The position numbers were made by a program, and so were the translations under genes. Shown here one piece after another: positions 54,056 through 58,584 of a stretch of 64,000 nt of DNA. The stretch is from Octopus sinensis. Its lineage: Eukaryota. Location of the stretch: the NCBI RefSeq assembly GCF_006345805.1, contig NC_043006.1, positions 13,144,001-13,208,000 of the forward strand. The letters run 5' to 3'. Position 1 is the first letter of the stretch; each line of letters opens with the position of its first letter. Below the pieces are notes generated by a model. It made no database searches. It saw nothing but the letters and a program-made list of their open reading frames with translations, and was not told the origin of the DNA.

Positions 54056-55088
54056 ACAGATAGAATAAATAAATAAATAGACAGACAGCATACATTCATT
54101 CACACACATATATATATATGCGTGAATGCATGCATTTAGGTATGGATGAATGGATCGAATGATCGATGGATCAATTGATAGATCGATGAACGTACGCATG
54201 TGCAATGTGTGAGTAAGAAAGCATGGGTGTGTAGGCGTGTGTCTATGTATATATATATATATTACTGAAATCACACCTCACGCCGCTTGATATTGTTTTT
54301 TATAATACAGGAGATAAATCCGTCGACTGAATGTGTAAAATATTATCGCCAAGTAAGGACTAATTTTATTCCTATAAGCATTTGGGTAAAAGAGAACCGC
54401 AGCAATGATCGACTCCATTCATTTATGCGGTTTTATAGGTTTTTATTCCAGTGAAGTCAAAGAGGATGTTCTCTTTTTCTTTTAGTGGAATTCTATTTTG
54501 AAAAAAAAAAACCGGAAGTATAAAAAATACTTGGAAATCTATAAAATTCTTGTGAAAATAAATCTTCAAATAAAACGGTAAGCAGCGAAAACATTTATTA
54601 TATACAGCGTTTCTTATCTCTCGGAGACGGGAAACTATAATCAGTTACAAACTTCTGCCTGATGTCTTTTATCGTGGAGAGAAGGAGAAAGTGAGAGAGA
54701 AAGAATAGCAGAGAGGAAACAGTGGAGAGAGGGAGAGCGAGAGAGAGGGAGAGAGAGAGAGAGAGGGAAGGAGAGAGAGAGAGAGAGAGAGGTGGGGGAA
54801 AGGCTGATCGATTCTTAACAAACGTAACTCGGGTCTAACGAAATGGGTTTTCTCCACATCAGTTGGTATTTTCTTTGGAAATTCAACAATTCATTACCAA
54901 TGGAACTTGGATTAAAAGACAGCAAAGGAATCCAACGCCAAAAATCTACCACTATATACATGTGATTCTATGTTCTTAAACACACATACACACAGACACA
55001 AAAATATACATACATAACACACACACTCACGCACTGACACACACATGTACACACAGAGGCACGCAAAAATAGTTATGTTCCTAAAATA

Positions 55089-58000
55089 ATAATAATAAAA
55101 TAAATGCGCCCTTTTAAAGCCTAGCCAGGCTCATGGGCCCGGTTTCCCGGTTTCTATGGCGTATGTGTTCCCCAGCTGGACGGGACGCCAGTCCATCTCA
55201 GCGTTACTCATTTTTGCAAGTTGAGTGGATTGGAGCAACGTGAAGTGAAGTGTTTTGCTCAAGAACACAATGCGTCGCCCGGTCCAGGAATCGAAACCAC
55301 AATCTTACGATCATGATGCTGACACCCTAACCACTAAGCCACGCGCCTCCACTAGGCTCATGGGCCCGGTTTCCTGGTTTCTATGGCGTATGCGTTCCCC
55401 AGCTGGACGGGACGCCAGTCCATCTCAGCGTTACTCATTTTTGCCAGCTGAGTGGCCTGGAGCAACGTGAATGAAGTGTTTTGCTCAAGAACACAATGCG
55501 TCGCCCGGTCCAGGAATCGAAACCACAATCTTACGATCATGATGCTGACACCCTAACCACTAAGCCACGCGCCTCCACTAGGCTCATGGGCCCGGTTTCC
55601 TGGTTTCTATGGCGTATGTGTTCCCCAGCTGGACGGGACGCCAGTCCATCTCAGCGTTACTCATTTTTGCCAGCTGAGTGGCCTGGAGCAACGTGAAATG
55701 AAGTGTTGCTCAAGAACACAATGCGTCGCCCGGTCCAGGAATCGAAACCACAATCTTACGATCATGATGCTGACACCCTAACCACTAAGCCACGCGCCTC
55801 CACTAGGCTCATGGGCCCGGTTTCCTGGTTTCTATGGCGTATGTGTTCCCCAGCTGGACGGGACGCCAGTCCATCTCAGCGTTACTCATTTTTGCCCGCT
55901 GAGTGGACTGGAGCAACGTGAAATGAAGTGTTTTGCTCAAGAACACAATGCGTCGCCCGGTCCAGGAATCGAAACCACAATCTTACGATCATGATGCTGA
56001 CACCCTAACCACTAAGCCACGCGCCTCCACTAGGCTCATGGCCCGGTTTCCTGGTTTCTATGGCGTATGCGTTCCCCAGCTGGACGGGACGCCAGTCCAT
56101 CTCAGCGTTACTCATTTTTGCCAGCTGAGTGGCCTGGAGCAACGTGAAATGAAGTGTTTTGCTCAAGAACACAATGCGTCGCCCGGTCCAGGAATCGAAA
56201 CCACAATCTTACGATCATGATGCTGACACCCTAATCACTAAGCCACGCGCCTCCACTAGGCTCATGGGCCCGATTTCCCGGTTTCAATGGCCTATGTGTT
56301 CCCCAGCTGGACGGGACGCCAGTCCATCGCAGCGTTACTCATTTTTGCCCGCTGAGTGGACTGGAGCAACGTGAAATGAAGTGTTTTGCTCAAGAACACA
56401 ATGCGTCGCCCGGTCCAGGAATCGAAACCACAATCTTACGATCATGATGCTGACACCCTAACCACTAAGCCACGCGCCTCCACTAGGCTCATGGGCCCGA
56501 TTTCCCGGTTTCAATGGCCTATGTGTTCCCCAGCTGGACGGGACGCCAGTCCATCGCAGCGTTACTCATTTTTGCCCGCTGAGTGGACTGGAGCAACGTG
56601 AAATGAAGTGTTTTGCTCAAGAACACAATGCGTCGCCCGGTCCAGGAATCGAAACCACAATCTTACGATCATGATGCTGACACCCTAACCACTAAGCCAC
56701 GCGCCTCCACTAGGCTCATGGGCCCGATTTCCCGGTTTCAAGGCCTATGTGTTCCCCAGCTGGACGGGACGCCAGTCCATCGCAGCGTTACTCATTTTTG
56801 CCCGCTGAGTGGACTGGAGCAACGTGAAATGAAGTGTTTTCCTCAAGAACACAACGCATCGCCCGGTCCAGAATCGAAACCACAATCTTACGATCATGAT
56901 GCTGACACACCTAACCACTAAGCCACGCGCCTCCACTAGCTCATGGGCCCGTGTTTCCTGGTTTCTATGGCGTATGTGTTCCCCAGCTGGACGGGACGCC
57001 AGTCCATCTCAGCGTTACTCATTTTTGCCAGCTGAGTGGCCTGAGCAACGTGAAATGAAGTGTTTTGCTCAAGAACACAATGCGTCGCCCGGTCCAGGAA
57101 TCGAAACCACAATCTTACGATCATGATGCTGACACCCTAACCACTAAGCCACGCGCCTCCACTAGGCTCATGGCCCGGTTTCCCGGTTTCTATGGCGTAT
57201 GTGTTCCCCAGCTGGACGGGACGCCAGTCCATCGCAGCGTTACTCATTTTTGCCAGCTGAGTGGCCTGTAGCAACGTGAAATGAAGTGTTTGCTCAGAAC
57301 ACATGCGTCGCCCGGTCCAGGAATCGAAACCACAATCTTACGATCATGATGCTGACAACCCTAACCACTAAGCCACGCGCCTCCACTAGGCTCATGGGCC
57401 CGGTTTCCTGGTTTCTATGGCGTATGCGTTCCCCAGCTGGACGGGACGCCAGTCCATCGCAGCGTTACTCATTTTTGCCAGCTGAGTGGCCTGGAGCAAC
57501 GTGAATGAAGTGTTTTGCTCAAGAACACAATGCGTCGCCCGGTCCAGGAATCGAAACCACAATCTTAACGATCATGATGCTCACACCCTAACCCTAAGCC
57601 ACGCGCCTCCACTAGGCTCATGGGCCCGGTTTCCCGGTTTCATGGCCTATGTGTTCCCCAGCTGGACGGGACGCCAGTCCATCTCAGCGTTACTCATTTT
57701 TGCCAGCTGAGTGGACTGGAGCAACGTGAAATGAAGTGTTTTGCTCAAGAACACAATGCGTCGCCCGGTCCAGGAATCGAAACCACAATCTTACGATCAT
57801 GATGCTGACACCCTAACCACTAAGCCACGCGCCTCCACTAGGCTCATGGGCCCGGTTTCCTGGTTTCTATGGCGTATGCGTTCCCCAGCTGGACGGGACG
57901 CCAGTCCATCTCAGCGTTACTCATTTTTGCCAGCTGAGTGGCCTGGAGCAACGTGAAATGAAGTGTTTTGCTCAAGAACACAATGCGTCGCCCGGTCCAG

Positions 58001-58295
58001 GAATCGAAACCACAATCTTACGATCATGATGCTGACACCCTAACCACTAAGCCACGCGCCTCCACTAGGCTCATGGGCCCGGTTTCCTGGTTTCTATGGC
58101 GTATGCGTTCCCCAGCTGGACGGGACGCCAGTCCATCTCAGCGTTACTCATTTTTGCCAGCTGAGTGGCCTGGAGCAACGTGAAATGAAGTGTTTTGCTC
58201 AAGAACACAACGCGTCGCCCGGTCCAGGAATCGAAACCACAATCTTACGATCATGATGCTGACACCCTAACCACTGAACAACCGCACCTCCACTA
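55089..58295 (-). repeat. Head-to-tail array of 14 tRNA-derived SINE bodies (224-227 bp) with one tail and one TSD pair
   Basis: Units start at 55127, 55354, 55580, 55805, 56032, 56258, 56485, 56712, 56938, 57164, 57388, 57614, 57840, 58067; tatgttcctaaaata at 55074-55088 and 58296-58310. Confidence 0.95.
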
Positions 58296-58584
58296 TATGT
58301 TCCTAAAATAGACCGGCAAATTGATGAATCGGTATGGTTTGGAAATATAATCAGGGACTCGTCGAGTTCCATCGGCATTGCATTATATACGCGGTATGTA
58401 CAAGATACCCCTTAACATCATCTTCATTAGGCAAGGTAGAGGGATCCAAAATATACGAACTTTTCACTACAGTAAAAGGAAACGCTGTCAAACTGAATAT
58501 ATTACAAATTTGCGATTGTCATGAGAAATCGCGCATTTACCTGTTGGTATAGCTCAGGTGATGGTGGCGAGAAAAAGATATATT

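What the first reader, a model, noticed from the sequence alone, without database searches (positions are those of the whole stretch)
55074..58310. Fourteen SINE bodies head-to-tail inside a single TSD with a single tail
One 15-bp TSD pair (tatgttcctaaaata) encloses 3.2 kb. Only the leftmost unit keeps the terminal segment and (ATT)-type tail. All 13 internal junctions are the same ccact-a-g(g)ctc fusion with about 1 bp of microhomology. Both end units have private variants (the outer head reads gaacaaccgcacc vs aagccacgcgcc). Interior units are mosaics of two haplotypes, with units 6-8 forming a block. A solo relative with its own TSD lies at 20.7 kb. Inference: a SINE turning into satellite DNA by unequal exchange, or a concatemer inserted in one event by rolling-circle or repeated template-jump RT. 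Each unit keeps Pol III box A/B-like motifs, giving 14 tandem potential promoters. Scattered 1-bp indels in the middle units look like long-read consensus noise.
Basis: partly seen in the sequence, partly recalled or inferred. Interest (0 to 1): 0.8.

Follow-up and report, generated by a model that had tools for sequence, protein, structure and literature searches.

The report
SINE tandem array inside one insertion site
A single insertion of a small tRNA-type retrotransposon (SINE) carries 14 head-to-tail copies of its body between one pair of target-site duplications; this is a clear but not unprecedented case of an interspersed repeat turning into a small satellite.

Summary
There are 14 units of about 227 bp (55089-58295; the SINE sense strand is the minus strand). 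A 15-bp TSD that occurs only twice in the window encloses them. There is one 3' terminal segment with one (ATT)n tail, and 13 identical internal junctions.

New points:
- The junction joins the SINE's natural 5' terminus (the Pol III start, shared within 2 nt by two other copies that have their own TSDs) to internal nt 227/228.
- No unit has a TTTT terminator on the sense strand.
- Both end units carry clustered private differences.
- The commonest interior unit is an exact chimera: 3'-end-unit head plus 5'-end-unit tail.
- Neighbouring units are more alike than random, and four-gamete failures show exchange between units.
- All 20 one-base indels are private and look like consensus noise.

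Best reading: one founding dimer, probably made by reverse-transcriptase template switching at insertion, later expanded by unequal exchange. Rolling-circle synthesis is disfavoured. Whether the junction exists elsewhere in the genome could not be tested, because no same-lineage DNA was reachable.

The same architecture, TSD-(SINE)n-TSD, is published for a bivalve, and SINE-derived satellites for squamates. This is a new member of a known kind.

The parts
55074..55088 (.). Target-site duplication, copy next to the SINE 3' tail (TATGTTCCTAAAATA)
   Evidence: Exact 15-mer, only two copies in the window; flush with the tail.
55089..55127 (-). The only 3' terminal part: nt 228-266 of the full-length SINE, TGGCTAGGCTTTAAAAGGGCGC followed by the ATTTATTTTATTATTATTAT tail. 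It holds the only TTTT (Pol III terminator-like run) of the whole array.
   Evidence: TTTT only at nt 255 of U14; segment unique in the window.
55128..55354 (-). Unit U14 body (nt 1-227), the 3'-most unit. Private cluster T110C, G125A, G126T, G134A, G137T.
   Evidence: Cluster of 5 of 6 changes within 28 nt, p=0.004.
55355..58067 (-). Twelve interior units U13-U02 (224-227 nt each). Each starts at the SINE 5' terminus (T)AGTGGAGGCGCG and ends at ...CCCATGAGCC. The beta-haplotype block U09-U07 lies at 56485-56713.
58068..58295 (-). Unit U01, the 5'-most unit, with the private head GGTGCGGTTGTTCAGTGG (weakened A box)
   Evidence: Five of 7 changes within 10 nt, p=1e-4.
58296..58310 (.). Target-site duplication, copy next to the SINE 5' end
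55346..55364 (-). Example of the internal junction CCCATGAGCC-T-AGTGGAGG. The other 12 recur about every 226 bp up to 58059-58077.
20653..20913 (-). Older solo copy of the same SINE family (81% identity) with its own 11-bp TSD (20642-20652 and 20914-20924). It fixes the natural 5' terminus of the family.
52541..52822 (-). Another old copy of the family with its own TSD (sense ATGTAGGTGTACAAG); same 5' terminus within 2 nt

Best explanation
A tRNA-type, Pol III-promoted SINE (266 nt: A/B-box head, CORE-like middle, 3' segment, (ATT)n tail) was inserted once by a LINE enzyme through target-primed reverse transcription, which made the 15-bp TSD (shown).

The first extra unit was probably created during that same event or a closely related RNA-templated one (inferred). 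The reverse transcriptase copied a tail-bearing SINE RNA to its very 5' end, then switched to a second, slightly different SINE RNA. It resumed at internal nt 227/228, with 1 nt of microhomology, at the edge of a small hairpin. This gives a dimer 5'-[body A, no tail]-[full unit B with tail]-3' inside one TSD.

Unequal sister-chromatid or homologue exchange and replication slippage between the two bodies then multiplied the 227-bp unit to about 14 copies (inferred from the variant pattern). This automatically copies the one founding junction and leaves only the two outermost half-units unhomogenised.

No unit has a T4 run on the sense strand, and 10 of 14 keep both promoter boxes. Any Pol III transcript started in the array would therefore run to the single terminal tail (inferred, not tested).
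For: - Single insertion: exact 15-bp TSD, one tail, one terminal segment.
- SINE nature: A box at nt 14 and B-like box at nt 58 with tRNA-gene spacing; dispersed older copies with their own TSDs.
- Junction at the true 5' terminus: the outer head follows the TSD as T-AGTGGAGG. The solo copy (TSD then GTGGAAGC) and the 52.6-kb copy (TSD then (AG)TGGAAGC) start within 2 nt of it, and the interior units start at the same nucleotide. A random DNA breakpoint would land there about 1% of the time.
- Two non-identical founders: U01 and U14 are the most different pair (12 substitutions). Their private differences are clustered (p=1e-4 and p=0.004), as subfamily or template differences would be, not as scattered decay.
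- Predicted first crossover product: the commonest interior unit (U02, equal to U13) equals U14[1 to 85-109] + U01[the rest] with 0 mismatches.
- DNA-level turnover: lag-1 similarity p=0.018; U08 = U09; 16 of 36 site pairs fail the four-gamete test, 4 of them free of CpG sites.
- No internal TTTT.
- In the same window another SINE family shows multimers inside single TSDs at four loci with one shared junction. Multimer formation at or around retrotransposition is therefore common in this genome.
Against: - One nucleotide of microhomology is equally typical of end-joining or replication template switching on DNA.
- The breakpoint sits at a small inverted repeat, GAGCCT-GGCT-AGGCTT, which could stall a fork.
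- The 'exact chimera' result is also expected if the end units simply acquired private changes after a DNA duplication.
- The beta haplotype (U07-U09, 7 linked changes; its states at sites 126, 157 and 207 match one or both older copies) matches neither end unit. It needs a third source, ectopic gene conversion or in-situ divergence.
- The clusters in U01 and U14 could be gene-conversion patches.
- No partner LINE 3' end was found in the window.
- No second locus and no reads were available.
Confidence: 0.5

Rival explanations
1. Purely DNA-level origin. One ordinary SINE insertion was followed by a microhomology-mediated tandem duplication of nt 1-227 (replication slippage or fork template switching near the small hairpin). 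Unequal exchange then expanded the array.
For: One nucleotide of microhomology at the junction. The breakpoint lies at the edge of the inverted repeat GAGCCT/AGGCTT. All turnover signals fit. This is the mechanism proposed for published SINE arrays and sSats.
Against: The left breakpoint would have to fall by chance on the exact SINE/TSD boundary, about 2-3 positions out of about 270. The interior heads should be copies of the outer head, yet they differ from it by 5 changes within 10 nt (p=1e-4), while the rest of U01 differs at only 2 sites.
Confidence: 0.28
2. The multimer arrived ready-made. A read-through transcript of a pre-existing master array was retrotransposed as one RNA (the units lack terminators, so a transcript starting at any unit ends at the single tail). 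Alternatively, the RT made many consecutive end-to-internal jumps in one event.
For: No TTTT in any unit, with one terminator in the tail. The outer 5' end is exactly a unit start, as a Pol III start would give. Promoter heads are variant-poor: 2 of 18 events against 6.3 expected, p=0.02. This is as expected if the variants come from transcribed source copies. Family 2 in the same window shows one junction at four loci with different TSDs.
Against: A 3.2-kb Pol III transcript would be unusual. No second locus with the family-1 junction exists in the 64 kb. The identical neighbours U08 = U09 and the neighbour-similarity gradient are more simply local. Thirteen identical acceptor sites with 1 nt of homology are improbable for independent jumps. 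In family 2 the upstream and downstream units do not cluster cleanly by position across loci.
Confidence: 0.14
3. Rolling-circle reverse transcription of a circularised 227-nt SINE RNA.
For: Uniform junctions and uniform unit length.
Against: The outermost unit ends at exactly the junction nucleotide, which is the linear RNA's 5' end. On a circle that is about a 1-in-227 coincidence. The units carry shared, block-wise and recombinant variants rather than only private ones. The outer head differs from all the others.
Confidence: 0.02
4. Assembly artefact: the true locus has 1-2 units, and the assembler expanded it or mixed two alleles.
For: Twenty private 1-base indels are concentrated in the interior units U04-U07, which shows that the interior consensus is of poor quality. 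The mosaic haplotypes could partly be allele mixing.
Against: There are at least 8 different units by substitutions alone, including a 7-site linked haplotype in three adjacent units and two distinct end units. That cannot come from 1-2 copies. The copy number may still be off by a few.
Confidence: 0.05

Closest known systems
TSD1-(SINE)n-TSD1 arrays of HCD tRNA-SINEs in the blood clam Scapharca broughtonii (Martelossi et al. 2024, PMC11481361)
   Same: Several units of one SINE family lie head-to-tail inside one TSD. The first unit has a complete head but a truncated tail, and the last unit has the complete tail. Arrays of 4-15 units occur in a mollusc.
   Different: In the clam the interior units are truncated at BOTH the tRNA head and the tail. 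Here every interior unit keeps the complete head down to the first nucleotide, so each keeps a full Pol III promoter.
SINE-derived satellites (sSats) of squamate reptiles (Vassetzky et al. 2023, PMC10702118)
   Same: Tandem repeats are made from part of a SINE, with a longer terminal unit that runs to the SINE terminus. They show partial homogenisation and are interpreted as an early stage of satellite birth.
   Different: sSats occur at many loci, reach up to about 1000 units and are enriched near telomeres. Here only one locus of 14 units is known, and genomic distribution could not be tested.
Template-switch chimeric retrocopies made by LINE reverse transcriptases (U6/L1 and other L1 chimeras, PMC4476161 and bioRxiv 10.1101/2025.02.02.635956; R2 end-to-end template jumping, from my own knowledge)
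   Same: The RT reaches the 5' end of one RNA and continues on a second RNA within one integration event. This gives two RNA-derived parts inside one TSD with one tail.
   Different: The known chimeras join different RNA species, usually at or near the acceptor's 3' end. Here both partners are the same SINE and the acceptor point is internal (nt 227/228). No experiment or second locus supports it here.
Dimeric or multimeric SINEs that retrotranspose as one unit (Alu; twin/dimeric tRNA SINEs), and B2/Dip multimers of up to 8 units (PMC8466645)
   Same: Head-to-tail SINE units.
   Different: [quoted passage not shown] Alu-type dimers recur at many loci with one junction. Here the units lack tails, and the junction is known from one locus only.

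Membership tests
tRNA-derived SINE (Pol III, LINE-mobilised) | Internal Pol III A and B boxes with tRNA-gene spacing | tested here: met
   TGGCTTAGTGG at nt 14 (11/11 to TRGCNNAGTGG) and GTTTCGATTCC at nt 58 (one mismatch to GGTTCGANNCC), 44 nt apart. Both are intact in 10 of 14 units; 0 expected in shuffles.
tRNA-derived SINE (Pol III, LINE-mobilised) | Head recognisable as a tRNA (cloverleaf or tRNA model) | tested here: not met
   ARAGORN finds 0 tRNAs in the window. There is no Rfam tRNA hit at E<=1 in 54000-59500. The head is tRNA-like only by its promoter boxes.
tRNA-derived SINE (Pol III, LINE-mobilised) | Flanking target-site duplications, and dispersed copies each with its own TSD | tested here: met
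   15-bp TSD here; 11-bp TSD at the 20.7-kb copy and 15-bp TSD at the 52.6-kb copy.
tRNA-derived SINE (Pol III, LINE-mobilised) | 3' end of short tandem repeats, with a 3' region shared with a partner LINE | tested here: inconclusive
   The (ATT)n-type tail is present. No LINE 3' end similar to the terminal segment exists in the window. The genome itself could not be searched.
CORE-SINE superfamily (includes octopus OR1/OR2 according to PMC4824008 and PMC5804259) | About 60-bp CORE central domain | not tested
   The middle part (TGTGTTCTTGAGCAAAACACTTCA...GCAAAAATGAGTAA) resembles the MIR/CORE domain as I recall it. No repeat library was available, and the source organism is not established (searches give only the literature statement).
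TSD1-(SINE)n-TSD1 tandem SINE array (Martelossi 2024) | More than 3 units of one family head-to-tail within one TSD; first unit with complete head and truncated tail; last unit with complete tail | tested here: met
TSD1-(SINE)n-TSD1 tandem SINE array (Martelossi 2024) | Interior and last units truncated in the tRNA head | tested here: not met
   All 13 downstream units start at the family's natural 5' terminus (T)AGTGGAGG.
SINE-derived satellite (sSat, Vassetzky 2023) | Tandem units derived from part of a SINE, with an extended terminal unit that reaches the SINE terminus | tested here: met
   U14 extends 39 nt to the 3' terminus and tail.
SINE-derived satellite (sSat, Vassetzky 2023) | Multiple genomic loci with satellite-like amplification and homogenisation between loci | not testable with these tools
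   No same-lineage genomic DNA is in any reachable collection.
Composite (dimeric/multimeric) SINE that retrotransposes as a unit | Same internal junction at several loci with different TSDs | tested here: inconclusive
   The junction occurs only inside this array within the 64 kb. The window holds no other young copy of the family, so the test has no power.

The most novel reading that the evidence does not exclude
The array is a self-propagating 'retro-satellite'. Its units keep full Pol III promoters and lack terminators, so read-through transcripts of 1 to n units, all ending in the single LINE-recognised tail, are made and retrotransposed. RT template jumps add further units. Under this reading SINE arrays in this genome would arise and spread at the RNA level rather than by local DNA exchange. 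The four same-junction multimers of a second SINE family in the same 64 kb would be another face of the same process.
Probability: 0.12. Interest if true: 0.7.

Novelty: new member of a known kind. Interest (0 to 1): 0.35.

Why it matters
The locus is a clean snapshot of an interspersed repeat becoming a tandem repeat. The insertion boundaries, the founding junction and the two unhomogenised end units are all still readable, so the order of events can be reconstructed. The junction at the exact transcript 5' end offers a testable link between reverse-transcriptase template switching and the seeding of satellites. Ten or more intact Pol III promoter cassettes in 3.2 kb could also matter locally, for example as a TFIIIC/Pol III binding cluster or through read-through transcripts. 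The general phenomenon is already described in bivalves and squamates, so the value lies in a well-resolved example and a lead for a genome-wide survey.

Tried and rejected
**Attempts to find the junction or the family elsewhere all failed to reach the source lineage**
- A protein search with the junction-spanning 71-aa ORF found no candidate.
- A metagenome scan with a 20-mer that would catch both solo and junction copies gave 9 hits. All were chance matches in 63-69% GC prokaryote-like contigs with no further SINE similarity.
- The conserved core 23-mer had 0 hits in viral contigs and in genome contigs.
- A protein search with the neighbouring LINE ORF found only 44-62% identical relatives; the few hits with a source name are cnidarian. 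The two loci fetched (L010, L011) contain neither SINE family.
- A family-2 SINE ORF found one 543-bp metagenome contig only.
- A full-text search for four SINE oligomers found 0 papers.

**Ideas considered and rejected**
- A higher-order 453-bp (dimer) repeat: the TRF score is only marginally above the 227-bp one, and the lag-2 similarity is not significant (p=0.29).
- Nested insertion of one SINE into another: this would leave a second tail, a second terminal segment and an inner TSD, and none is present.
- A large inverted-repeat or hairpin structure around the array: none was found.
- The Rfam miRNA-like hits at 54070-54151 are far below gathering scores and lie in a palindromic microsatellite.
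- The RNA fold of the full SINE (z=-3.2) gave no evidence that the 5' end and nt 228 are brought together. It showed only that the breakpoint lies at a 6-bp hairpin.
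Full report
**1. The observation**

TRF finds one array at 55127-58295 with period 227, 14.0 copies, 96% matches and 1% indels. The SINE reads 5'->3' on the minus strand. Splitting that strand at the recurring AGTGGAGG gives 14 units of 224-228 nt. I number them U01 (58295-58068, 5'-most) to U14 (55354-55089, 3'-most).

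The 15-mer TATGTTCCTAAAATA occurs exactly twice in the window, at 55074-55088 and 58296-58310. Both copies abut the element, and the flanking bases on both sides differ, so the TSD is exactly 15 bp. The chance expectation is about 1e-7.

Only U14 continues past nt 227. It runs into TGGCTAGGCTTTAAAAGGGCGC followed by the tail ATTTATTTTATTATTATTAT, and that segment is unique in the window.

The 13 internal junctions read ...CCCATGAGCC-T-AGTGGAGGCGCG. Twelve match with at most 1 mismatch, and one (U06/U07) has a single-base deletion. There is no other occurrence in the window. The T could belong to either partner, because GAGCC-T-GGCTAGG is the uninterrupted 3' sequence.

- the outer head variant;
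- private variants in the other end unit;
- a solo relative at 20653-20913 with an 11-bp TSD.

**2. What the unit is**

Each unit has a perfect A box (TGGCTTAGTGG, nt 14) and a B box with one mismatch (GTTTCGATTCC, nt 58). They lie 44 nt apart, as in tRNA genes. Both are intact in 10 of 14 units, and the other four are one change away (U01 by its head cluster).

The head is no longer recognisable as a tRNA by ARAGORN or Rfam.

Five older copies of the family (67-81% identity) are scattered in the window, and two of them have clear TSDs of their own. Those two start within 2 nt of the unit start: TSD|GTGGAAGC and TSD|(AG)TGGAAGC against T-AGTGGAGG here. Unit nt 1-2 is therefore the family's natural 5' terminus. 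It lies 12-13 nt upstream of the A box, where Pol III would be expected to start (established knowledge of type-2 promoters).

No unit contains TTTT on the sense strand. The first T4 run is at nt 255 of U14, in the tail.

The middle of the element looks CORE/MIR-like to me from memory. The literature lists the octopus SINEs OR1/OR2 as CORE-SINEs. I could establish neither the organism nor the superfamily with a tool.

**3. The junction**

The junction joins the exact 5' terminus of a full-length SINE to internal nt 227/228, skipping the 39-nt 3' part (terminal segment and tail). In the predicted fold of the full element, the breakpoint is the last base of the 5' arm of a 6-bp hairpin, GAGCCU-GGCU-AGGCUU.

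A DNA duplication with random breakpoints would hit the SINE/TSD boundary only about 1% of the time. A reverse transcriptase that runs off the 5' end of its template and continues on another SINE RNA produces this junction naturally. It also gives exactly the observed order: tail-less unit upstream, tailed unit downstream, one TSD.

A nested insertion is excluded, because there is no second tail, terminal segment or inner TSD.

Rolling-circle copying is disfavoured. The outermost unit ends at the same nucleotide as the junction, which has no meaning on a circle.

**4. Variation among units**

By substitutions there are 22 distinct events.

- *U01.* It differs from all the others by 5 changes within 10 nt of the head (p=1e-4 for such clustering) and by only 2 changes elsewhere.
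- *U14.* It has 5 of its 6 changes within nt 110-137 (p=0.004).
- *End units compared.* U01 and U14 differ at 12 sites.
- *Commonest interior type.* U02 equals U13 and differs from U10 by one substitution. U02 equals U14[1 to 85-109] + U01[the rest] with zero mismatches. That is the product expected from the first unequal crossover in a U01-U14 founder dimer. It is also what one would see if both end units had simply acquired private changes.
- *Beta haplotype.* U07-U09 share 7 linked changes, and U08 and U09 are identical. Subsets of these changes occur in U03, U04, U05 and U11.
- *Evidence of exchange.* Adjacent units are more similar than in random orders (p=0.018), with no period-2 signal (p=0.29). 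Sixteen of 36 pairs of shared sites fail the four-gamete test, and four of those pairs involve no CpG-transition site. Exchange between units has therefore occurred.
- *Variant-poor heads.* Shared variants avoid the promoter head: 2 of 18 events in nt 1-80 against 6.3 expected (p=0.02). This is a weak hint that some variation predates the array.
- *Indels.* There are 20 one-base indels. None is shared by descent, three sites recur in non-adjacent units at homopolymers, and 14 fall in U04-U07. An indel-to-substitution ratio near 1:1 with this pattern is what unpolished long-read consensus looks like.

**5. Mechanism**

Identical junctions need only one founding junction, because unequal exchange copies it. 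I therefore favour (0.5) a founding heterodimer made by RT template switching between two slightly different SINE RNAs, followed by DNA-level expansion and partial homogenisation.

The expansion half of this is well supported. The RT half rests on the exact-terminus junction and on the clustered differences of the two end units.

The rivals are:
- a purely DNA-level first duplication (0.28);
- arrival as a ready-made multimer, either from a read-through transcript of a master array or from many jumps in one event (0.14);
- rolling circle (0.02);
- assembly artefact (0.05; the copy number may in any case be off by a few).

The beta haplotype is not explained by two founders. It needs ectopic gene conversion, a third template or in-situ divergence.

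**6. Comparison with what is known**

Martelossi et al. 2024 describe TSD1-(SINE)n-TSD1 arrays of 4-15 units in the clam S. broughtonii. There the first unit has a complete head, the last has a complete tail, and the interior units are truncated at both ends.

Vassetzky et al. 2023 describe SINE-derived satellites in squamates with an extended terminal unit. They discuss primary duplication followed by amplification and homogenisation.

Multimers of full-length units are common for B2 and Dip.

The present locus fits this known kind. Its distinguishing detail is that every repeated unit keeps the complete head from the first transcribed nucleotide, and so keeps a whole promoter.

**7. Limits**

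None of the reachable collections contains this lineage's genome.

**8. Seen in passing**

A second SINE family is very dense in the window. It forms multimers inside single TSDs at four loci, all with the same internal junction: complete 3' end ...AAAGAAATA joined to nt 52 of the next unit. Upstream and downstream units do not sort cleanly by position across loci. It is therefore unclear whether this is a dimeric master or a recurrent site-specific event. Either way, multimer formation linked to retrotransposition seems frequent in this genome, which raises the prior for an RNA-level step at the 14-mer.

Noticed in passing
window 14579-14997, 21211-21611, 28251-28633, 44217-44855 (all minus-strand sense): A second tRNA-type SINE family (head GGCGAGCTGGCAGAAACGTTAGCAC, B box GAGTTCAAATTCC, 3' end GTAAAGAAATA) forms dimers or a trimer inside single TSDs. 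The TSDs are ACAAAATGTAACAAAAC, TAAGTTATTTA, ATTCAAAGATAC and AGATACGAATGGTTA. All four loci share the same internal junction...AAAGAAATA|GG(T/C)ATT(T/C)CGTC, which is nt 52 of the next unit. Four of 7 near-full copies in the window are such multimers. A distance tree does not separate upstream from downstream units cleanly.
   Followed up: partly
window 44585-44660: The family-2 trimer has a second junction type. The 3' end AAAGAAATA is followed by 15 nt of a downstream-type unit (GGCATTTCGTATGCC) and then directly by nt 7 of a new full unit (GGCGAGCTGGCAG). This looks like a template switch or a deletion within a longer multimer.
   Followed up: no
window 45269-45510 (+): A family-2 'monomer' ends AAAGAAATA-GGTATT before unrelated sequence. 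It carries the first 6 nt of the dimer junction, so it may be a truncated dimer.
   Followed up: no
window 60081-61061 (-): A 326-aa ORF whose C-terminal 187 aa are the C-terminal part of a non-LTR retrotransposon ORF2. Its homologues are 44-62% identical; several carry PF00078, and the few with a source name are cnidarian (Actinia, Porites). The N-terminal half is an expanded (TTATTA)n microsatellite read as poly-Asn. No Pfam hit of its own.
   Followed up: partly
window 11708-12367 (+) and 13245-13649 (+): Further degenerate retroelement ORFs. The first has a weak RVT_1 match (E=0.0013, below the cut-off); the second has no Pfam hit.
   Followed up: partly
window 3046-3441 (-): A 131-aa ORF that looks to me like a Tc1/mariner transposase C-terminus (...NAPIHTAK...). 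Pfam found nothing at E<=0.01.
   Followed up: partly
window 26113-26399: A G-rich 17-bp minisatellite (GGAGTGGTGGACAGCAA, 12.9 copies, with 27- and 31-bp variants) that produces long ORFs on both strands.
   Followed up: no
window 21839-22102 and 30052-30346: A 34-bp tandem repeat (7.7 copies, 68% matches) lies just downstream of a family-2 dimer. A separate 128-bp repeat (2.3 copies, 96%) is embedded in TA/TG microsatellite.
   Followed up: no
whole window, e.g. 40706-41837, 42237-42841, 15409-15743, 22961-23297: Microsatellite density is extreme: 138 TRF rows in 64 kb, including (TGTA)n of 1.1 kb and several (AT)n of 0.3-0.6 kb. The repeat landscape reminds me of coleoid cephalopod genomes, but no tool result establishes the organism.
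   Followed up: no
window 54070-54151: Sub-threshold Rfam microRNA-family hits (mir-3149, mir-297 and others; 22-31 bits against gathering scores of 81-100) fall on a palindromic TA/TG-rich stretch. These are chance matches.
   Followed up: yes
L012 (ENA ERZ23499442, scaffold_285125, 543 bp): This is the only public sequence found that carries one of the window's SINE families. A metagenome contig has an ORF 88% identical to the family-2 antisense translation, so it is presumably host DNA in a metagenome.
   Followed up: no
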